A DNA stretch of 64,000 nucleotides from Glycera tridactyla (taxonomy: Eukaryota): assembly GCA_965644265.1 (NCBI GenBank), contig OZ286463.1:96472001-96536000 (forward strand), read 5' to 3'. A program made the position numbers and the translations under genes. The notes under the pieces are model-generated. The model searched no databases. It had not been told where the DNA came from and was given only the letters and a program-made list of their open reading frames with translations. Below, piece after piece: positions 1-54,664 of this stretch. Position 1 is the first letter of the stretch, and every line of letters begins with the position of its first letter.

Positions 1-1900
1 CCAAAAAAATCGGGGAGATCTGCTGAGCCAAAAAATGATTATCACTGCTTTCACGAGTGGGGTCATCAGCTGTTGTGTATGTTACTTTTTTATAAGAATC
101 TCTCAAAAACACTCATAAATTGCTCAGAATTAACATTTATCATTATAAATCAATAAACTTTGTTCCAGGATGTCATTCCACACTACTTATTTCCTTCTCA
201 ATATCAGTCATTCAAAAGGATTTGAGCCAGAAATACAATGTCCGTCCTCAATCCTCAGGCGCTGTCTTTAATTTTTTTTCCTCTAAGCAATTACAATAAG
301 CATAAGTACCAAACTCATTATTCCATTTGAATACATATTGATGAGATGATGGGAACAGGGTTTTCTCATTCTCTGGAAAATTTGGGGAGTAATGAACATC
401 ATCTTATGTGTATGTTATTTTATGTGACGTATGTTACTGCTGACGCCAATTTTTTACACCCAAGTTATCTCATGTAAATTTCATTCAGTAATTGCCACCA
501 AAAGTAGCTAGTAGCTACATTTATCTTCACAGTAATCCAAATTTACATAATATCATTGAATAGGCTTGAAAACATTTGGACTTTCCAAGTTATCTGATTT
601 TATATGACCACTCTCAAGAAAAAAAGTCAAGGATAACATACATATTGGGTTGCAGCTCATGCAGATTATGTCAAAATAACATACATATGCTCACATTATC
701 CATATTCCTATACCACAGTCATCATTTGTGACCATCAGTGGATGAAAAAGCATGGATCATCCAAATGTTGAGCAACCGTCCAACAAGTTCAACTTTATCC
801 TGAGATCCCTTGGCTTTGTATCACCTAGTATATATGTATGTTATGCGAAGTTTGCATGTTACTATAATTTTGGATTGACATCCATGCACTTTTTCATCAA
901 CTATAAACCAGGTTATGAACGAAACCGGAAAAATATGTAGTGTCATGAATGCCTGGGGATCACATTTATAGGAGTGATCAATCCAAGATGGCACCTGTTG
1001 CTTGTAAACATGTTAGAACTCTGACCATAGGTATGTTATCCATTGACGGAAATGTCACCCTTTAAGTGCCAAATCATTTTTAGAGGTTGTTTATCACCTT
1101 GTTGAATCTTTTGAGCACTGGGTTGGTCATTGTAACAATATTTTCAAATGATCTGATGGTGATACACGAGTTGATTCATAGCAGAAATCAGTGGGATTGA
1201 ATGGTGAATTTGCACTCAAAAATTGACGGAATGGTAGAAACATACTGTGACGCAGTTCAGAGATGTCAGGGAGCTATTTATCTCTAATATTTGACGTGTC
1301 CCAAGGTTGTAAAATGAAGCCCTGCTATCGATTGTCAAGACTGAGTATGTTTGAGATCTTGGGATTATCTCGATCTGATATAGCACATCACCAAAGTAGG
1401 GTGGGATGTGGTGTTATGTTCTGTGCGGTCAAAAATGGCCAATTTTGGCCATTAAATTGCCTCTAACTTCACCAAAATTAGAGATATTCCTATCAAAATT
1501 GGACCACCAATTGTTTGAATCACATTACATCAGTCACCATGTTCAAATTCTGGGTGAAAGCTGCTGAATTTACATAAGATACATTTTTCGGTAGCTGGCC
1601 CCAATTTCGGAGAATTGGCCATATACCATATACAGTGGGATGTGTGACCAGAGGCTTCCAACATGAGACACCTCTGATGAGTGGAAGTCTCCCTATTTCT
1701 CATAGTTGGACAAAGTCAAACCTGCTTGAGACCATCTCTGTTCAAAGGTCATCTAAAAAGACCACCCAAAGATATCATGGCAATGTTTCCCATATCGAGA
1801 ATTGTCTAGAGACCATCATTCTTCCAAAGTCACTCATCGCATCCATGTGCTAGTCCAACTTTGACCTATTCAAGCAGTTCATCACATTCATCAATACTGT

Positions 1901-2077
1901 TAGTGAAACCTGCAACGAGAGACTGCCCCAACTGTTACCTAAAAGCGGTCTCTGAAAAGAGGTGGTCTCTCATCGGAGGTATATTCGACTATGTCAAATA
2001 AAAAAGCTGCTCTGAAATGCAGTCTCCCGTCAGAGGTGGTCTCTCATCAGGGAGGTCTCTTGTAACAGGTTTCACTC
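1901..2077. mobile_element. TA-type Tc1/mariner-pogo-like MITE (GAGACC family), degenerate ends
   Basis: AGTGAAACCTG ... CAGGTTTCACT inverted ends with repeated GAGGTGGTCTC motifs, shared with the other copies. Confidence 0.6.
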
Positions 2078-2141
2078 CAATAAGCTTCCTATTGCAGATA
2101 CTGTCATGTAAACTCACTCATCATTGTCTGATCTCTTGCAG

Positions 2142-2438
2142 GCTGTGTTTCACATAATCGGCCATAAAGCAGATCAGGATGCAAAGCGAGCAGTGACGAC
2201 TCGTGAAGGTCAACAATTTGCCGACTTCCACGGGCTACATTTTATGGAGACATCAGCAGTAACGGGACAAAATGTAGAAGAAGCATTCACTGCCATCACT
2301 AAAGATATCTACTCCATGCTTGAACAAGGTCAACTAAGAGTGGAAGAAGGCTGGGAAGGGATTAAAAATGGATACGCCCGTCCAAGAGAGACGTTCACAT
2401 TAATGGAAGGAGAAGTAGAAGGAGGAGGCTGCTGTTAA
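2142..2438 (+). CDS. RAB39: Terminal coding exon of a Rab39-like small GTPase (upstream exons not found in window)
   Basis: Acceptor ctcttgcAG at 2140-2141. The exon encodes GHKAD (Rab39-type G4 GHKxD), ETSA (G5), GWEGIKNGY (Rab39 GWEGVKSG-like motif) and a C-terminal GGCC prenylation motif, with TAA at 2436-2438. AATAAA at 2459-2464. Confidence 0.85.
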   Translation, partial: AVFHIIGHKADQDAKRAVTTREGQQFADFHGLHFMETSAVTGQNVEEAFTAITKDIYSMLEQGQLRVEEGWEGIKNGYARPRETFTLMEGEVEGGGCC

Positions 2439-4300
2439 GCAGGTTGCCTAGCAACCCCAATAAATGTTTGTTTCCGGGCAAATACTTGGCCGATGCTAGC
2501 AGGTATCAGGTCTTTACTGGCCGATTAACAAATATTGGTTGGGAACAAAATGCTCGAGACACCAAACCCTCTTCTGACTGGAAGTTCCTTCCACCTGATA
2601 TGTCACTGTCATTGTTCTGTTAGATCAAATCGAGGGCATAATATTTCCATTTTATATCTACCATTTTATCCAATAATTATGTACCTGTCATATTTGAATG
2701 TGATTGTTTAAATATGTTGACTGTACCCGGTCCCTATCTCAACAGAAATGAATTCATCCAAAACTTCCAGTTTATCCCACTTGAATGTCTCTAGCAATAG
2801 TTGACTTTTTTAGGTTGTTCATTGAGTCTCGCTCACCACATTATGGAGGCCTCACCACAGCAGGTCCTGCCGGTGTAGAACAGAGAGTAAATAACAAATA
2901 CAACAAACAACCACATTTAATGTGCTGGTCTGTACAGATCTCATGGATTTTGGCATTGTGATCTCCATGATATACTCTATATCTTATTGTGAAAATTTAC
3001 AATATTGGCTCATATAGCCATCATATTTGTTCAGTCATAGTCTAATTTGACAGTTGCTAACTGCTCGAAAGAGATACGATCTATATAATGCAGGAAGAGT
3101 TGTATTGCCTGTTGAAAAATACACTGGTTATTGTTATATTTTGTATGTATAACAGCAGATGTTCATGCTGGTACTCATTCAGATAACATTTGAGTGTAGA
3201 CCAGAGTTCAAGCCAAATGCTATTGATCTCTATTGATGATATCACAGCATGTATTTTCTGGGTCATTTCAGCTATCAATCTGAGTAGCACACTACGAGCA
3301 GTAGTTGGCCATTCTATGCCTGTACTCTTGGCAAGTATACCAGTCTTGACTTCCTCAGGTCACAATTCTGTTACGAAATAAAAATTATATCATTCCAAGG
3401 ATTCCAAGGTCCGTACAGTCGAACCTGCCGTAGCCATGCACTGTACTAAGGTAGAACCTTTCTGATGAAACCAGGCTGTAATCACCTCACCAGAGTATTT
3501 TCACTTAAATTCACCTGTACTAAGCATGCACCTGTTTTGAGCATGCACTTTTGTGTCTTCCTTTCGCTGCATTTGTTGGACATGTTTCACTACCCAAATC
3601 CTCAACATGACGGTGTCCCAGAATCTGGATGATAGTGTTTCTATTTGCTATAGTTTTCTCGGATCTTTATTGCTGCCAAACTTTCTTGCAAATTCAGTGC
3701 TAAAGATCTGAGAATGAAAGAGTTGGATATACTTTGTTCAGTCAAACCATCCATGATGTACATGCATGAATAGTCTGTGAAGATGAAAACATGTACATTC
3801 AAGCCAACAATGATGTATATGAATGGATGGTCTGTGAAGATGAAAACATTTGAACTCATGGAGGTTTCACACCAGTTTATTTACAGCTGACCGTGGAAGT
3901 CCTTGCTCAGTGTTGCATGTCATGGCATATGCATGCTTGGGTGTGCAGAGCTTTTAGAGAGCACCTCACAGACTGTTGTAGAGTGCACACCATCAGCTGA
4001 TATTGATTCTGAAATCACAGCATGGCAGTCAGTTGTTGAAAGTTACAGCAGAGTGGTTTTATCACTATAGCAACACTTTCTTTTGTAATACTCCTCCTCT
4101 TTTATCTGATCAGGTCACTAGCATAATCTGAATCACATTTATATATTGAAAGCATTTAAATTTATTCCAATGGGCTGTTTGCTTCAGCCAGCCTTTTGGC
4201 AGTAAAAGACATCTCCATTCTTTGGGAATTAATTGCTTTGGACTGATAGTTGCATAGTCAGTTAAACCATCTAAAGGTTTGTTTATATTATTGCATGTAT

Positions 4301-5544: not shown

Positions 5545-8220
5545 TATACAGTCATGATAACGATGAATGATCATGGAAGGTGGAGCTTATAACAGTTTGA
5601 GTATTTATTCTAGGGTGAACTGTATTTGTGATACTTGAGTATGTGATACAGGCCATGCTATCTCCTATGATGGAATCATCGTCAGAACAAGCTCTTGGAT
5701 CCTGTGTTAGCTATGAACCATTTCTCTCTTGACGATATCCTATCGGAGAGGCTGAGCAGAGTTTTTTCCAACATCGTTTCAAATTAAATGTGTCTTACTT
5801 ATCAACTAGCTTTGTTTGCTGAACAATGTAGTATTACTGTAGCACCAATGACAGCTGAAGTTATATCTTGTTTTGAAAATGAAATGTCAACAAAATGTGA
5901 GTAAGTAAGTAAGTGAGTATGCTCTTATTTATACTCGGGGGAAGACCAGCACCCTGATTTCAAAAACCATAAATAGTTGAAAAGCAGTGTGTTAGTGGTC
6001 ATGGCCATTTTTGATTGAGGCTATGAACAGGTAGTTTCCATCGCCATTCTTCATATGTGAAGAAATTTCAATCTGTATATTAGTAACCTCAGCAATCATA
6101 TGATTGAGAATTTCTAGAACTATAAATTTCTAAACAGATCCAAGTTTTCGTTAGGTTTTATCCTTCCATGTCATCAAAACACAAGGTACACAATTTGATA
6201 TGGTCAGAGTGAGATATGATTTGCTCTGATGAAATATGACTGTGACTCATAGTAGGGCAGATCCCGGGCATTCGAGCATTTGGTGCTGTACCAGCACTGG
6301 GCCACTGCTGCCAAATATAACAGCAATACTGGCCTTATTTTGGTAATACATTCATCAAAATATACAGGTAATTCAAAAATGGTGGCAACTTTACTAAAAT
6401 TATCAAATGTCCATAATCCATGTCTGTTTTCATCTCTCTCTATCTCTGCCTGCCTCCCTTTTCATAACTCTGGGCTGTTTGATTGATGGTCAGGCAGGTT
6501 GTTAAGCTAACATCTGTCTCATGTATTTTGTCATATAACTCACATTCTTGTATTTATCATGTCTGCGCTTTATTTATTCCAATGTGGGATGAGATTGTCT
6601 TGTTGAAGTATGATTTGTTTGCACATGCTGATGATATTTCTCAGTACAGTATTACCTGCGACTCTGGCAGTTGTTGCTCTGTGTTGATTCTTTGTTGCTT
6701 CTGGGTGGGAGGACATTCTCGCAAGATAGATTCTTGAACAATCACTAGGTCTAGTCATGTGTATATTTGAATGAGAGAGAAAAGGTCTAATGTACTTGGT
6801 TACAAAGCTAGGCATCCAATTCTCTGAGATACTGTATATTGCTAAATATATGCGCAGTGCACAAAGGCATATACAATATAGTCAAGTGCCCTGCACATCT
6901 ATTTGGCACGGAATCTGAGGATAAATCAATTGCGCCTAATGGCACCCTAATTGCTATTGAAGATGCCAGCCTTCTGTTTTTATCGTGCATATACGATTAT
7001 TCAGCTTTTTCAGTGTTTGAAACCACCTCATCATAGATTGAATACAGGGTGAGTGTCTAACTAGGTATTGACGTCTATATGACGATATACGGTAAATAGG
7101 GAGATGCTATCTACTGTATGATCATGCTGATATAAACATGCCCCAGCTATGTATATTGCCAGATTTTCACCATGCACAAAACAAGACTATAATTCACTGA
7201 CTTACCACGGAAATATCAAATTACATATCCAGAAACCAACATTACTGGTGCAGTTATACAGTGATGGATCATAAAAAGTACAGTCACTGGCATTGTTCAG
7301 TTAAAGGAAATATATGCGACTACTTGTACAAAAAGGTCCTTAATAAGCAAGTCGAAAGGAATTCACCAGCGCTAGACATTTGGAATACATGTACTGGGCA
7401 GTGTATGACACACATTGTATTTCTAGCGTTCTCAGTACATCTCAGCTGCAGCCTTCATCCAGTCTTGCAGTTCCGTGTTGTGATTTGTGTTGACCAGTCG
7501 CATACATGTGGCGTTATTTTTGTTATGGCGTCTTAACGACATCGCTAGGATGTTGTTGTGTTAACATATCATGTCATATTACAGTTGCACCTGTACAGCA
7601 GCATTCCAAATTAGAAATTTTGCCATCAAGAGCTGCACCAGCACTTGAATCATGAATTGGGACAGGGGTGGGAATTGCTATCATTTTCACTACTGATGGT
7701 TTGGTGAGTTTACCTATAGGCGGTAGTTTCAAATCACTTGCATTATACACAGATATACCAGCAGGTAACCTGATGGTGGTCTCATGTATGATGGGTCGGT
7801 TTGAGAAATCCACACACATACACTACATGTACTCCTATCTGAAATATTGGCAAGTTTCACGCAAGAGCTGGCATTTCATGTTTGTGAGCTATGATTCAAG
7901 ATTGCAGAGATGCCAACTAATATGATATCAGAGTGAAGCGTATGTTTTTCAATCCAAAATTCCCCCATTCACTCTTAGAAAATTATAATCATTTTCCTTG
8001 ATTATTGCAAATACTGGCAACATTACTAATTTGTGTCATTGAAGGTTGGCACTCCAGATTGGTCTCGCTTGACTTCCATCTGTTTTTATATGTCAGTAAA
8101 GGGAGAGATTAGAGGTGGATATCTGAAATCAATAAAAGCTTAATAGATTTGATCCTGCAATGAACAAGCATGTTGGAGACCTTAAAAGTTGGTCCCACTA
8201 GACAGATGCTTGCTGGTCGC

Positions 8221-24891: not shown

Positions 24892-25566
24892 TATTTTGTC
24901 ACATATTGCTCATTTCCACCTTTCATTTCTGAGAGGATTTGCAGATATAAACGATCAATATAAGCGTCTGGTTCTCTCTTTCTTGGATTGTCTCTTTTTT
25001 GAAAAGTTGGTGGTGCATATGTATCCCTTTAGGTGTCAGAGTGATCACTGATGAAGATTAAGGTGATGATCCAAAAAGATTCCCAGGAAATGTCATTTTG
25101 CCAATCTGGCAGCAAATGAGTGAACTTATTTGACAGACTGATGAGAGCTTTGGTTCATGGCTAATGGTCCAGGGCTCGACATTAACGGTTGCCCGGCTGC
25201 CCGGGGCAAGTAGCCACAGGTGTCGGACAACAAAAATGTTCGATGAGGGTGCCCTACGGGCAAGTCATCAGGAACCCAGCTGTCCGACACTTCTTGATGT
25301 TGATTCAAGTAACCTCCCCCTCTGTCAAGAGTCCACTGCCCTCCTACCATCAGTGCGTAATCTTATAGCCTGCTTCCATTTACCACTGACCCTCTTACTC
25401 TCATCCCCAGATTGTAAATTGTTTCAATCAACACCTTTCTTTGAAAGTACCCCAGCCATGAAGTTTCTAATGTGTGTGCTCAATATTAACTCTAGCTTCA
25501 ATCGAAGTTTGTCGTAAGAATTGGGCATATTCAATGACCTGTTCTGCATAAATAATGAGGTTGGTA

Positions 25567-25741
25567 CAGTGAACCTGCGACGAGAGACCCCTCGACGAGA
25601 GACCGCCTCCGACGGGAGACTGCTTTTCCAGGACAGCTTTTCTACTTGTCATAGTCAAATAAACCTCTGACGAGAGACCACCTCTTTTGAGAGACCGCTT
25701 TTTGGTGCGTTTAGGGCGGTCTCTTGTGGCAGGTTTCACTA
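25567..25741. mobile_element. TA-type MITE (GAGACC family)
   Basis: TA|CAGTGAACCTG ... CAGGTTTCACT; repeated GAGAGACC motifs. Confidence 0.7.
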
Positions 25742-26939: not shown

Positions 26940-28075
26940 CAGTGTTCACGAAAAGTCGTCGGACCGCCGGACATCACGGACGACATTTTTGAATGTCCGA
27001 CGAGAGGCTATGTTGTCTTCGGTCACGATGTCCATGGAGGTGACGTTTATACGCAATAAAGACACGTTTGCATCTCAAATCGCAAGGAAAACGAAAGATC
27101 AGTAGCCCATCTTGACTGTATGAAGCCAACTCGAGGTAATTCGTCTGATTATGCGAGAAAATCGCGAGAGATTGATTACAGGTCAAGGCTAGTTTCATAT
27201 CGGGCGCCATCTTGGTTATTTTTCATAAGAGACAAATAGCGGCCGGAAATGGCGCTTTTATACGCAATAAAGACACGTTTGCATCTCATTTTGCGTGTAA
27301 AACGAAGGATTAGTAGCCCATCTTGACTGTATAATGCTCAAGTGATGTAATTCTCAGTATATTGAGAGGAAATCGTAAAAGATCGACTGCAGAGCAAGGC
27401 TATTTATCAACTGATCCCTTTTGGGATCTTCTTCGCCCCTAGCGGCGGCGCAGAGAACCAGCGAACTTTCTTGAGCAGACAGCAACAGCTGGACAGGTCA
27501 TAGGAAAAACGTGGGTGGGGTGAGGTGCTGTGTGGGTGGGTGTGGGTGTTGTGCTGTGTGTGGGTGGGTGTGGTGCTGGGTGGGTGGGTGTGGTGCTGGG
27601 TGGGTGGGGTGAGGTGCTGGGTGGGTGGGTGTGGTGCTGGGTGGGTGGGGGTTAGGTGCTGGGTGGGTGGGTGTGGTGCTGGGTGGGTGGGGGTGAGGTG
27701 CTGGGTGGGTGGGTGTGGTGCTGGGTGGGTGGGGGTTAGGTGCTGGGTGGGTGGGTGTGGTGCTGGGTGGGTGGGGGTGAGGTGCTGGGTGGGTGGGTGT
27801 GGTGCTGTGTGTGGGTGGAGGTGAGGTGCTGGGTGGGTGGGTGGGTGTGGTGCTGTGTGTGGGTGGGTGTGGTGTGTGGGTGGGTGTGGAGCTGTGTGTG
27901 GGTGGAGGTGAGCAATTATCCTAAGCAATTGTCAGACGAGAAATGAAATTGTCAGACGAGAGCCTTGCTTCTCGTCTGACAAGATTGTCAGACGAGAAAT
28001 GAAATTGTCAGACGAGAACCTTGGTTCTCGTCTGACAAAAAGTCAGACGATGGCCAAAACTTTTCGTGAACACTG
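26940..28075. mobile_element. hAT-like non-autonomous element with 6-bp TSD
   Basis: Perfect 16-bp TIR CAGTGTTCACGAAAAG; GATGTT at 26934-26939 and 28076-28081; GTCAGACGAG subterminal repeats at 27929-28050. Confidence 0.85.
27511..27910 (+). repeat. G-rich minisatellite, 42-bp unit made of two ~21-bp subunits
   Basis: Unit GAGGTGCTGGGTGGGTGGGTGTGGTGCTGGGTGGGTGGGGGT, degenerate at the edges. Confidence 0.9.
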
Positions 28076-28201: not shown

Positions 28202-28377
28202 CACTAAAACCTGCTTGAGTGTAAACCTGTGCTAGGCGAAATCCTGTCTTAAGCACGTACCCAACGGTCTGCTCGGATGTTTTTCCTCACTATAATTGTC
28301 CTGCACTAAGCAAAATCCTGTCTTAAGTGGAAGAAAAATTTGGTCCCATGACTTATCACTTAAGACAGGTTTTACTG
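28202..28377. mobile_element. TA-flanked MITE
   Basis: TA|CACTAAAACCTG ... CAGGTTTTACTG|TA. Confidence 0.7.
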
Positions 28378-28981
28378 TATATAGAATGTTATCCAAGAAA
28401 TAGATAGAATAATCTATTATCTACAAGTTCGTGTTTAGTTTGTGAAAATCGGACCACCAGTTGATGAGTTTCATAAATTTTTCTAGAGGCATCTTTCCTA
28501 ACATTTGCCATGACGCTATACAAATCGAAACCGTGGTGCTGCTAAAATTCGCCGAAAACACTCTACAATTTCTCCATGTATTCCCAATCCATCTTTGTCA
28601 TATCACTCATCTGGATAGAACTCTATATTACCTTCAAGTTCATCTTTTGTTTGTGAAAATCCGAGCCCTGGTTGAGGAGTTCCATCAATTTTTCTAGAGG
28701 CATCTTTCCTAACATTTGCCGTGACTCTGCACAAATCGAACGTGCGACACGGCCAGTTTACCGTTGACCTTGATTGTTCTCTCGCAAATGTTTGTTATCT
28801 GACCAATCAGCGTTGGCGCTTTTGCCTCACGTGACCTGCCCGCTTAATATTTGATTCTACAGGCACATGTGACTATCTGTACGCGGGTTACGTGCAAGCA
28901 ACAGATGCGCACGGTAGACGACGTTTACCAACATGCTAGATTCGACATCGGATGATAAATGTTCTGACATGACTTTTGCAG

Positions 28982-52745: not shown

Positions 52746-53606
52746 GTTATCTGTAAGAAACTCGATCAATCAATCAATCATCCATCAATTCTTTTGAAAC
52801 GCGCCCTCTCGTGGTGGTTGAGGGAACTAGCAAGCGCGACTTGTTGGAAGATCGCACAGCGTCACCTGATATGCGCGGTTCTCGCACCTGCTGGCACGCT
52901 CCAAGCAGACGACTCGTATACATCTTAGACACAGAAGGCCAACCTGGATAGGCCAAAAGAAGATCAACCGAGCGCTACATCACCTTCCAAAGAGTCCAGA
53001 AACTTCCTTGGAGGAGGGGTGCGTATATGTATTCGGCTGTCACAGCGAAGAAGAAGCGCAAAGCATGAAACAACGTGTATTCACTTTGCTTTCATTTTCA
53101 TCGCCAAGTGACGGCCTTGGCTATGTCTTCATTCATGCATTGATATATTGCGAGTATAAGAATTCACTTGTCAGTGCAGTGACGCATCCAGGTCCATGCT
53201 CCCATTTGCGGGTGTCCGAGATTTCCTCATATATCTTATTGAAACTATTTTTGTTCATTATCAGATCTGTTGTACCTTTGACGACTTCCTGTGACAGGTG
53301 TATTTTCATCCGATAACGGGTCTAGTGGGTATTTTCACGCCGTCTACCCTCCCGCCTCGCATCCGTGCTTTCATCCGATAGCGTAAATCACGTGTTGTTT
53401 ACGCTTACTCGATCAGCGAAACAATCGAGGTCAAGGGTCAACCTGGTTGTGTCGCTCGTTCGATCAGTATCGCGTCACGGCAAATGTTAGGAAAGATACC
53501 TGTATAAGAATCGCTGTATCTCAGCAACCAGTGGTCTGATTTTCACAATCTAAACACCAAATTGAAGCTGATTCATTCTTCTATCCATTTATCGGATGAT
53601 AAGTCC

Positions 53607-53755
53607 AGAATGTCCCTCGTTCCGGGTACGGGAAGGCCGTAAAGGCCTCGCAGGCATCCCCGGGAAGGCACTCGTGGCCTGCGGCCACTCGTGCCTTCCC
53701 GGGGCCGCCTACTCGGCCTTTACGGCCTTCCCGTACCCGGCACTCGGGGCATTCT
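53607..53755 (-). repeat. 149-bp gap-free inverted repeat (73-bp arms, 3-nt loop)
   Basis: 63 of 73 arm positions are complementary with no indels; centre at 53681. Confidence 0.95.
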
Positions 53756-53970
53756 TTCATAGTGTACAAATACGTCGCCAATCCCAGCGCTTCGTTGGGA
53801 CAGGTGGCAGGTATCACCAAATTGACGGAGGGGAGAAACAAAAGATCGGTTCAGTCTAGATCTATATGATAGGTCGAACACATTTCACTCATTTAGTTAA
53901 CACTAGAGCCAAGTAATCAGGCTCACGTGTCACTTTCAGCCAGATGCATACAAATAATCATTTTCTTTTT

Positions 53971-54176
53971 GTAGATAGGTAGAGGTGTGTCTGGACTGTC
54001 AGCTACTTCCAATTGACATCATTTTAGGTTCTCCATCATCTTGTGTGCAGGGTTCGTGAGAGTGATGTATACAGGGGAGAGAATATCTTGCTTTCATTGA
54101 CCAGGAACACACGGCGTGGCGGCACACATAATCCTATGGATTGATACATGCCGTGACCTCAAACAACCAGACAAAC
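53971..54176 (+). mobile_element. SINE-like family B copy
   Basis: Collinear with 50091-50280. Confidence 0.7.
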
Positions 54177-54664
54177 AGGAACCGAGTTAGCCCTAATTCT
54201 TTGAGAGATGGATGCATCTCGGTCTCCATAGAGCCTATTAATTAGAGGCGGTCGGTACCGCCGTCGACAAGGCTGCTTTGGCGCACTTTGGGTCACTTTG
54301 CATTGACACCCCTATCCTTGAAGTAGACTCATCCAAGGCTGAGAATGGGAGCAACTAGTGAGGCAATATCGGGGCGGAGTCTGGCAAGTGAGATCAGGGG
54401 TTAAGGACCCAGGGTTTTGATTCAGTTGGCATCTTGAGCTGCCAGACATCATCTTCATCTCTACCTGCACTGGTCAACGTGTAGTTTTACCATGAATGCA
54501 CTACTAGCCATTAAAGTGTAGACGTTTATATAGTTGTCGGATTATACTTTTTGGATACCCTTGGATCCCGGAGTGAGGCCACCCCGACCTCACATATCCG
54601 GACAATCCTGTGAATATGTCATAATCCTATTTCAGATTTCTTCCTTTGCATTTCATCTGTGAAA

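What the first reader, a model, noticed from the sequence alone, without database searches (positions are those of the whole stretch)
53607..53755. Strand-asymmetric 149-bp hairpin built from tandem G.A motifs and a GNA triloop, upstream of TEX11
Seen: 73-bp arms, no indels, 10 non-complementary positions. Six of the ten are three regularly placed TC/TC doublets on the + strand. On the minus strand each reads 5'-CGAG-3' opposite 5'-CGAG-3' (tandem G.A/A.G), and the loop is C-GCA-G. Nine of the ten minus-strand mismatches are G.A or G.T, whereas on the + strand most are pyrimidine-pyrimidine. Established: 5'-YGAR-3' tandem sheared G.A pairs and C(GNA)G triloops are unusually stable in single-stranded DNA hairpins, and folded single strands with defined mismatches are the substrates of integron attC sites, IS200/IS605 HUH transposases and parvovirus termini. 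Inference: random decay of a palindrome would not convert GA to TC identically three times. The element looks selected to fold on one specific strand, for example as the recognition site of a ssDNA-intermediate (tyrosine-recombinase or HUH) mobile element or as a structured antisense RNA. It is a GC-rich island in AT-rich DNA, next to the presumed TEX11 promoter/5' exon.
Basis: partly seen in the sequence, partly recalled or inferred. Interest (0 to 1): 0.75.

Follow-up and report, generated by a model that had tools for sequence, protein, structure and literature searches.

The report
Asymmetric end hairpin of Crypton transposon
The 149-base hairpin is the conserved end structure of a short, non-coding copy of a Crypton-type jumping gene (moved by a tyrosine recombinase). 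The family has thousands of copies in this genome, and the hairpin's one-sided mismatches are also kept in mussel and acorn-worm relatives, hinting that these elements recombine through folded DNA, as bacterial integron cassettes do.

Summary
It has nothing to do with TEX11. It lies 6 nt from the 3' end of a 459-bp non-autonomous transposon (window 53303-53761) from a family with at least 4,300 copies in this 2.04-Gb genome.

Copies of 2.7 kb with the same ends carry one ORF, a DUF3504/Phage_integrase tyrosine recombinase of the CryptonA type. It is under strong purifying selection (dN/dS about 0.06).

Layout: a 13-nt 5' terminal sequence, its exact inverted copy 4 nt upstream of the hairpin, the 73-bp stem, then a 6-nt tail. 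No target duplication is made.

Across subfamilies 20-25% diverged, 37 of 73 stem pairs change on both sides. The three CTCG/CTCG sites (TC.TC on the ORF-sense strand, CGAG/CGAG on the other) and the T-N-C loop (G-N-A on the other strand) stay fixed.

Related elements in Ptychodera flava and two Mytilus species have the same layout and the same CTCG/CTCG sites on the sense strand.

The selection for strand asymmetry and the tyrosine-recombinase element are supported. Folding of a single strand in vivo is an inference. The layout mirrors an integron cassette with its attC site.

Two earlier notes of this scan reached the same reading on autonomous copies elsewhere in this genome.

The parts
53303..53761 (+). 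Whole non-autonomous element (459 bp), derived from a Crypton-type tyrosine-recombinase transposon
   Evidence: Homology among 30 copies starts and stops at these positions. Two paralogous empty sites show exact ends and no duplication. The first 83 nt (82%) and the last 171 nt (98%) match the 2.7-kb recombinase-encoding element.
53303..53315 (+). 5' terminal inverted repeat; here TTTTCATCCGATA, family consensus TTATCATCCGATA
   Evidence: It co-varies with the 3' copy in another subfamily.
53590..53602 (+). 3' subterminal inverted repeat TATCGGATGATAA, the exact reverse complement of the consensus 5' end
   Evidence: With the start of the hairpin it occurs 4,347 times in the genome (control 6).
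53603..53606 (+). 4-nt spacer GTCC between the inverted repeat and the stem; unpaired against the tail in the joined-ends fold
53607..53679 (+). Left arm of the hairpin, with CTCG sites at 53616-19, 53647-50 and 53671-74
53680..53682 (+). Triloop TGC (GCA on the minus strand), closed by C-G
   Evidence: Family loops are TCC, TGC, TAC and TTC, so T and C are fixed and the middle base is free.
53683..53755 (+). Right arm of the hairpin, with CTCG sites at 53688-91, 53712-15 and 53743-46
53756..53761 (+). 6-nt tail TTCATA, the 3' terminus of the element
   Evidence: Exact head-to-tail junctions TTCATA|TTATCATCC occur in tandem arrays.
28377..28958 (-). Second, older copy of the same family in the window; its palindrome has been lost (coordinates approximate at the 3' end)

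Best explanation
The hairpin is the cis-acting end structure of a non-autonomous member of a CryptonA-type DNA transposon family. The family's own protein is a tyrosine recombinase. Shown: the element's limits; its shared ends with recombinase-encoding copies; purifying selection on that recombinase; compensatory evolution of the stem and of the two 13-nt inverted repeats; and conservation of three CTCG/CTCG sites and a T-N-C loop, always on the ORF-sense strand, within this genome and in a hemichordate and two mussels. Inferred: when the two ends are joined, in a circle or a tandem copy, the 3' repeat, the hairpin, the tail and the 5' repeat form one long imperfect palindrome. The observed element boundary lies where a recombinase bound to the repeat would cut the bottom (antisense) strand. 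That strand carries tandem sheared G.A 'CGAG blocks' and a C-GNA-G triloop, so it can fold as a nearly continuous helix, while the sense strand has three pyrimidine-pyrimidine internal loops. I propose that the folded or extruded site marks which strand is exchanged, as extrahelical bases do in an integron attC site, and that one strand is exchanged with a target resembling the element's first bases. My odds: cis-acting end of a tyrosine-recombinase transposon, about 0.9. Asymmetry under selection, about 0.85. Folded-strand or attC-like mechanism, about 0.4. The overall confidence given (0.8) is for the first two claims together.
For: Copy number and ends:
- The centre motif occurs 2,046 times and the 3' repeat plus hairpin start 4,347 times; controls give 0 and 6.
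- Ends are defined by 30 aligned copies, two empty paralogous sites and 46 exact head-to-tail junctions.

The recombinase:
- Four full-length copies have the order 5' repeat, ORF of about 520-570 aa, 3' repeat, hairpin, tail.
- Pfam gives DUF3504 at 5.6e-19 and Phage_integrase at 1.1e-8.
- HxxR, H and Y align with XerA.
- dN/dS is 0.069 and 0.054, with synonymous sites saturated.
- Homologs are the KIAA1958/QRICH1-like Crypton group.

The stem and the asymmetry:
- 37 of 73 stem pairs change on both sides. The covariation score is 0.293 against 0.106 in shuffles (0 of 500 reach it) and 0.06-0.08 when the partner is slid.
- The doublets stay unpaired in 24/25, 17-24/25 and 25/25 sequences. The other W mismatches are Watson-Crick in the consensus.
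- The 5' and 3' repeats co-vary: TTATTATCTGATA goes with TATCAGATAATAA.

Other species:
- Ptychodera flava has two CTCG/CTCG sites and a TTC loop downstream of the ORF.
- M. galloprovincialis has two CTCG/CTCG sites and a 24-nt inverted repeat abutting the palindrome.
- M. edulis is similar.

Folding and chemistry:
- The joined-ends fold adds a 13-bp stem and a 4x6 internal loop.
- CGAG blocks are shown by NMR (PMC10085684). The d(GNA) triloop with a C:G closing pair is unusually stable (PMC3201870).
Against: There is no direct evidence of folding or of a single-stranded intermediate.
- Generic nearest-neighbour parameters give almost equal stability for the two strands: -73.7 against -77.6 kcal/mol here, and equal values in Ptychodera and M. 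galloprovincialis.
- The Mytilus relatives have a TAAA loop, not T-N-C.
- Co-variation of the two repeats would also arise if one protein simply bound both as duplex DNA.
- The apex-proximal doublet was part of the search pattern used for sampling, so its 25/25 is ascertained.
- The recombinase's first catalytic arginine was read from a motif, not from a structural alignment.
- The 5' exon of the gene was not modelled.
Confidence: 0.8

Rival explanations
1. It is a non-autonomous Helitron2/Helentron (HINE/DINE-1-like) element moved by a Rep/helicase HUH enzyme, and the hairpin is the rolling-circle termination signal.
For: The layout is the one that defines Helitron2/Helentron ends: a terminal repeat at the 5' end, with its inverted copy just upstream of a 3' hairpin (PMC3627910, PMC4067079). 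The genome holds at least 104 Helitron_like_N matches, many in intact frames of 2,000-2,800 aa.
Against: The only ORF found between such ends is a tyrosine recombinase. It is conserved under selection in four lineages here, and it keeps the same layout in other phyla. One complete tandem unit of Rep family A lacks these ends. So do 4.7 kb downstream of a family D ORF. A Rep copy on C1 has none listed within 20 kb. Insertion is at Y|RTAY, for example T|G, not between T and T.
Confidence: 0.05
2. The asymmetry acts on duplex DNA. The six CTCG motifs, all on one strand, are directional binding sites for the recombinase or an accessory protein, and the palindrome never needs to fold.
For: CTCG itself is what is conserved across phyla, while its flanks vary. 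Predicted strand stabilities are nearly equal. The Mytilus loops are not GNA.
Against: Duplex binding does not explain compensatory evolution of 37 stem pairs. It also does not explain a loop with fixed first and last bases and a free middle base. The motif is exactly the CGAG block known to form tandem sheared G.A pairs (PMC10085684). Five copies show two-base flips that copy one arm onto the other, as expected if the arms pair at least sometimes.
Confidence: 0.25
3. The hairpin works at the RNA level, as a terminator or stabiliser of the recombinase mRNA, or as an antisense or small-RNA precursor.
For: It lies downstream of the ORF on the sense strand in all species examined.
Against: Non-coding derivatives keep it at 98% identity while they lose the ORF and the 3' UTR. 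That is the signature of a cis requirement for mobility. The sense RNA would carry weak UC/UC loops. No RNA holder was found; the runs held only repeat contigs.
Confidence: 0.07
4. It is a host regulatory element of the neighbouring gene (the TEX11 promoter region), or a chance or decaying palindrome.
For: None beyond position.
Against: There are thousands of dispersed copies with the same ends. The asymmetry is conserved across phyla. No TEX11 match was found.
Confidence: 0.01

Closest known systems
CryptonA DNA transposons (Kojima & Jurka 2011, PMC3212892; DUF3504-encoding, PMC13465315)
   Same: The sole protein is a tyrosine recombinase of the DUF3504/KIAA1958/QRICH1-related group. There is no reverse transcriptase and no target duplication. 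Non-autonomous derivatives are abundant. Homologs occur in molluscs, hemichordates and cnidarians.
   Different: Published descriptions say animal Cryptons have no terminal repeats, direct or inverted, and neither paper mentions a hairpin or palindrome. This clade has a 13-24-nt terminal/subterminal inverted repeat and a 110-220-nt imperfect palindrome with conserved CTCG/CTCG sites.
Helitron2 / Helentron / HINE (DINE-1) ends (PMC3627910, PMC4067079)
   Same: An asymmetric terminal inverted repeat: the 5' copy at the terminus, the 3' copy immediately upstream of a 3' hairpin, then a short tail. No duplication. The 5' end begins with T.
   Different: Those elements are moved by a Rep/helicase, have stems of about 5-20 bp and insert between T and T. 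Here the enzyme is a tyrosine recombinase, the stem is 73 bp, and the target is Y|RTAY.
Integron gene cassette with attC, recombined as a folded bottom strand by the tyrosine recombinase IntI (from my own knowledge; not read here)
   Same: The order of parts matches. The integrated unit starts with the outer part of one core repeat and ends with its inverted copy, followed by an imperfect palindrome. Joining the ends rebuilds a paired repeat, an unpaired spacer, then a long stem with strand-defining imperfections. The crossover lies at the inner edge of the repeat. The enzyme class is the same.
   Different: The integron system is bacterial and has no sequence relation to this element. attC uses extrahelical bases rather than tandem G.A sites. 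Single-strand use is proven for attC and only inferred here.
CGAG blocks and C-GNA-G mini-hairpins in DNA (PMC10085684, PMC3201870, PMC13037366)
   Same: The minus strand has exactly 5'-CGAG-3' opposite 5'-CGAG-3', and a GCA loop closed by C:G.
   Different: Those are oligonucleotide and promoter studies. No link to transposon ends is reported there.

Membership tests
Crypton (CryptonA) tyrosine-recombinase transposon | Autonomous members encode a tyrosine recombinase as their only protein, with no reverse transcriptase | tested here: met
   The 2.7-kb copies have a single long frame that hits DUF3504 and Phage_integrase, and no other ORF of 150 aa or more. The window copy itself is non-coding.
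Crypton (CryptonA) tyrosine-recombinase transposon | Catalytic residues R-H-R-Y are present | tested here: inconclusive
   HxxR, H and Y align with XerA 5hxy. The first arginine was read from an LRGSHE-type motif only. No structure was predicted.
Crypton (CryptonA) tyrosine-recombinase transposon | The window element shares the cis ends of the autonomous element | tested here: met
   The first 83 nt are 82% identical and the last 171 nt 98% identical to the recombinase-encoding copy.
Crypton (CryptonA) tyrosine-recombinase transposon | No target-site duplication; at most a short similarity between an element end and the target | tested here: met
   Two empty paralogous sites show none. The 3' flank consensus D-T-R-Y-C resembles the 5' end TTATC.
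Crypton (CryptonA) tyrosine-recombinase transposon | The recombinase groups with known CryptonA or DUF3504 proteins | tested here: met
   85 homologs, named KIAA1958-like, QRICH1-like or ZMYM2-like, all carrying PF12012. No tree was built.
Helitron2 / Helentron (HINE) | Asymmetric terminal inverted repeats and a 3' hairpin | tested here: met
Helitron2 / Helentron (HINE) | An autonomous partner that encodes Rep/helicase and has the same ends | tested here: not met
   Two Rep families and one further Rep copy were checked and lack these ends (coordinates). Elements that do have these ends encode a tyrosine recombinase instead. Other Rep families were not checked.
Helitron2 / Helentron (HINE) | Insertion between T and T | tested here: not met
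   The empty site is CACT|GTAC. The base after the insertion point is G, A or T, and the base before it is mostly C.
Integron attC site | Recombined as a folded single strand by an IntI-type integrase | not testable with these tools
   Only the order of parts can be compared. This is a functional analogy, not membership.
MITE of a cut-and-paste (DDE) transposon | Terminal inverted repeats at both termini plus a target-site duplication | tested here: not met
   The 3' repeat is 159 nt inside the end, and there is no duplication.

The most novel reading that the evidence does not exclude
A widespread clade of animal Crypton transposons recombines through an attC-like folded DNA site. One strand of a long imperfect palindrome, made helix-continuous by CGAG blocks and capped by a GNA triloop, is the substrate. 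The mismatches tell the tyrosine recombinase which strand to exchange. This would be the first eukaryotic counterpart of integron or CTX-phage single-strand recombination.
Probability: 0.35. Interest if true: 0.85.

Novelty: new variant of a known kind. Interest (0 to 1): 0.66.

Why it matters
How Cryptons move is still only a model. The key papers state that animal Cryptons have no terminal repeats and that their limits are hard to find.

This family has exact ends, thousands of copies, intact recombinase genes and a conserved, strand-asymmetric end structure. That gives a concrete recombination site to test in vitro. It also gives a structural signature, an inverted repeat plus a long palindrome with CTCG/CTCG sites, for annotating such elements, which could otherwise be filed as Helitron2/HINE.

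If the folded-strand reading holds, it links eukaryotic transposition to the integron type of single-strand tyrosine recombination. It would also show natural use of CGAG blocks and GNA mini-hairpins as strand markers.

For this locus, the practical message is that the hairpin is a repeat, not a regulatory feature of the neighbouring gene.

Tried and rejected
1. Rfam scan of 52-56 kb: only a sub-threshold mir-33 hit away from the hairpin.

2. Helitron2/Helentron was my first classification, from the layout. I looked for a Rep/Hel partner. A tandem unit of family A and the region downstream of a family D ORF have no such ends. I dropped the idea once the 2.7-kb element turned out to encode a tyrosine recombinase.

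3. My first look at that element missed the ORF, because it runs off the end of locus L061.

I then sampled hairpins as 200-230-nt pieces.

5. Sequencing runs held only repeat-derived contigs from coded organisms A and B. None covered the unique flanks, so there is no evidence on expression or on presence/absence alleles.

6. Four homolog look-ups returned no usable DNA: two proteins were not on record and two samples' files were too large. The Mercenaria locus was not analysed.

7. The TEX11 (SPO22) family search found nothing anywhere, including the control genomes, so it is uninformative.

8. The GTGTA direct repeat flanking the window copy is not a family feature.

9. In scripts, the recombinase ORF of one copy was read across two overlapping fetched pieces of one contiguous stretch. 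No exon joining was done, and the probable upstream exon was left unmodelled.

Full report
**Observation.** Window 53607-53755 is an inverted repeat with 73-nt arms, a 3-nt loop and no indels.
- A script listed 11 positions that are not Watson-Crick: three TC/TC doublets, two more T.C, two A/C pairs and one T.G.
- Each doublet sits inside CTCG on the + strand in both arms. The minus strand therefore reads CGAG opposite CGAG, and its loop is C-GCA-G.
- Both strands fold far better than shuffles, with z-scores of -15.9 and -14.6.
- The description is correct apart from the count (11 with the wobble) and the word 'regular': the spacings are 31 and 24 nt.

**It is a repeat.**
- The 149 nt found 2,536 first-look candidates in the window's own genome (2.04 Gb). 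All 40 that were scored were 95-100% identical in one orientation and only 80-85% in the other, so the asymmetry is shared by the family.
- The centre motif CTCGYGGCC-NNN-GGCCRCTC occurs 2,046 times, against 0 for the reversed control.
- The 3' repeat plus the start of the hairpin occurs 4,347 times, against 6 for the control.
- About half of the copies that keep the repeat have lost the middle of the palindrome.

**Limits and layout.**
- Aligning 30 loci shows that homology runs from window 53303 to 53761.
- The element begins with TTATCATCCGATA; the window copy has one change.
- The exact reverse complement lies at 53590-53602. After it come 4 nt, the hairpin, and a 6-nt tail that ends the element.
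- Two paralogous empty sites show no duplication and no extra bases: one in the window at 25562-25574, one in L013.
- Forty-six exact head-to-tail junctions (control 0) confirm the termini. They include a four-junction array with 3,157-bp spacing.
- The 3' flank prefers D-T-R-Y-C, which resembles the element's own first bases TTATC. The base before the insertion point is mostly C.

**Which enzyme.** The layout is the one that defines Helitron2/Helentron ends (PMC3627910, PMC4067079), and the genome has at least 104 Rep matches.
- Three Rep checks found no such ends. A complete tandem unit of one Rep family lacks them. So does the 4.7 kb downstream of another family's ORF. A Rep copy on C1 has none listed within 20 kb.
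- Locus L015 shared only the repeat, hairpin and tail with the window copy. It belongs to a 2,741-bp element whose single long frame (541 codons) hits DUF3504 (5.6e-19) and Phage_integrase (1.1e-8).
- Three more full-length copies were fetched. They are 98%, 74% and 68% identical to the first in the region searched (5' non-coding part and start of the ORF). All have the same order: 5' repeat, ORF, 3' repeat, hairpin, tail.
- Between lineages dN/dS is 0.069 and 0.054, with synonymous sites saturated.
- The HxxR, H and Y residues align with XerA.
- Homologs are the KIAA1958/QRICH1/ZMYM2-like group that Kojima and Jurka derive from CryptonA (PMC3212892).
- The window element shares its first 83 nt (82%) and last 171 nt (98%) with this autonomous element.
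- The family is therefore a Crypton-type tyrosine-recombinase transposon, and the window copy is a non-autonomous derivative.

**Is the asymmetry selected?** I aligned 25 hairpins from subfamilies 75-80% identical.
- 37 of 73 stem pairs change on both sides.
- 81.6% of cells are paired, against 70.4% in shuffles. The covariation score is 0.293 against 0.106 (0 of 500 shuffles reach it), and 0.06-0.08 when the partner is slid.
- The outer and middle doublets were not part of the sampling pattern. They stay TC/CT in 24/25 and 17-24/25 sequences. Most exceptions are C-to-T changes in the CpG of CTCG (CTTG).
- The inner doublet was part of the sampling pattern.
- The loop is TCC, TGC, TAC or TTC. 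The first and last bases are fixed and the middle base is free, which reads G-N-A on the other strand.
- The two 13-nt repeats co-vary. A subfamily with TATCAGATAATAA at the 3' side has TTATTATCTGATA at its 5' end, as predicted before the sequence was fetched.

**Other phyla.** Contigs encoding homologs 36-40% identical in protein were fetched with the gene on the + strand.
- *Ptychodera flava.* A roughly 220-nt hairpin lies 390 nt after the ORF. It has two CTCG/CTCG sites and a TTC triloop closed by C-G.
- *Mytilus galloprovincialis.* A 120-nt palindrome is perfect except for two CTCG/CTCG sites. A 24-nt sequence abuts it, and the inverted copy of that sequence lies upstream of the ORF.
- *M. 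edulis.* It is similar but more decayed.
- *Metagenome scaffold.* The closest relative (50% identity) ends just inside a homologous repeat and hairpin start.
- *Strand.* In the two species tallied, mismatches on the ORF-sense strand are mostly pyrimidine-pyrimidine: 6 of 11 in Ptychodera (1 purine-purine, 4 mixed) and 5 of 6 in M. edulis. The two sites in M. galloprovincialis are TC/TC as well.
- The stems share no other sequence with ours. The feature is therefore old and functional.

**Mechanism (inferred).**
- Joining the ends rebuilds one long imperfect palindrome: a 13-bp duplex of the two repeats, a 4x6 unpaired spacer, then the 73-bp stem.
- Tyrosine recombinases cut at the spacer side of their binding repeat, with the repeat lying 5' of the cut on that strand. 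This is established knowledge of the Cre, Xer and Int families.
- The observed element boundary matches that position on the bottom (antisense) strand.
- A matching cut on the top strand would lie 159 nt away. That is incompatible with an ordinary 6-8-bp overlap, so exchange of one strand followed by replication fits better.
- The left junction is always element-type, while the right junction varies with the target. This agrees with exchange of one strand at a fixed point.
- The bottom strand carries CGAG blocks (NMR: PMC10085684) and a C-GNA-G triloop (PMC3201870).
- This order of parts is that of an integron cassette with its attC site.
- Caveats: generic energy parameters do not separate the strands. 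The Mytilus loops are TAAA. Duplex-level binding to directional CTCG motifs remains a serious rival.

**Literature and earlier notes.**
- Kojima and Jurka (2011) state that no terminal repeats were found in animal Cryptons, and never mention a hairpin or palindrome.
- A 2026 paper on CryptonA still says that Cryptons lack terminal inverted repeats and that boundaries are hard to define.
- Searches for Cryptons together with hairpin gave only general reviews. Repbase and Dfam could not be consulted.
- After reaching this reading I found two earlier notes of this scan, on autonomous copies elsewhere in the same genome. They describe a Crypton with a long, deliberately imperfect hairpin at its right end, and one calls the genome a mollusc. 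They agree with this report but are not independent evidence.

**Verdict.**
- The TEX11 context is incidental.

Noticed in passing
window ~28377-28958 (minus strand): An older copy of the same family, with its 5' end at 28958. Its palindrome has been lost: the remnant of the 3' repeat runs straight into the tail motif.
   Followed up: partly
window 53954-54181: A repeat with summed contig depth near 100,000 in runs of two related coded organisms. It lies 190 bp downstream of the element and was not classified.
   Followed up: no
L062 (G000:C29:54877000-54885000): Tandem 7,758-bp units of a Helitron-like element with an OTU-DUF6570-Rep-PIF1 frame of 2,062 aa. Its 3' non-coding part has four short hairpins with C-GNA-G triloops (GCA, GGA, GTA, GAA) on the ORF-sense strand, and nine 16-nt tandem repeats containing CACTCG.
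   Followed up: partly
G000, whole genome: At least 104 Helitron_like_N matches, falling into several families. Many lie in stop-free frames of 2,000-2,800 aa, and some copies are 97-100% identical to each other, so recent activity is likely.
   Followed up: partly
G000:C51:22790314-22799807: Four exact head-to-tail junctions (tail directly followed by the 5' repeat) spaced 3,157 bp apart: a tandem array of an element with the same tail as the window copy. There are 46 such junctions genome-wide.
   Followed up: partly
L014:~1560-1575; L003:826-1005 (minus); L106:~2670-2690; L085; L095: Five copies have one TC doublet flipped to GA, always in the left arm, which makes that site fully paired. 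A two-base flip suggests copying from the other arm.
   Followed up: no
L113 (GCA_002832895.1 contig, 141-3269): Reverse-transcriptase ORFs lie directly upstream of a DUF3504 + Phage_integrase ORF, indicating a retroelement that uses a related recombinase.
   Followed up: no
window 53298-53302 and 53762-53766: The window copy is flanked by GTGTA on both sides. Other copies and the two empty sites show no duplication, so this is probably chance or local microhomology.
   Followed up: yes
window 27929-28057: A cluster of nested palindromes built from TTGTCAGACGAGAA and its complement, next to the old copy. It was not studied.
   Followed up: no
L108:2142-2206 and 6277-6341 (Ptychodera flava): A perfect 65-nt inverted repeat, its arms 4,070 nt apart, encloses the recombinase gene and its hairpin. 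It may be the ends of an enclosing element.
   Followed up: no
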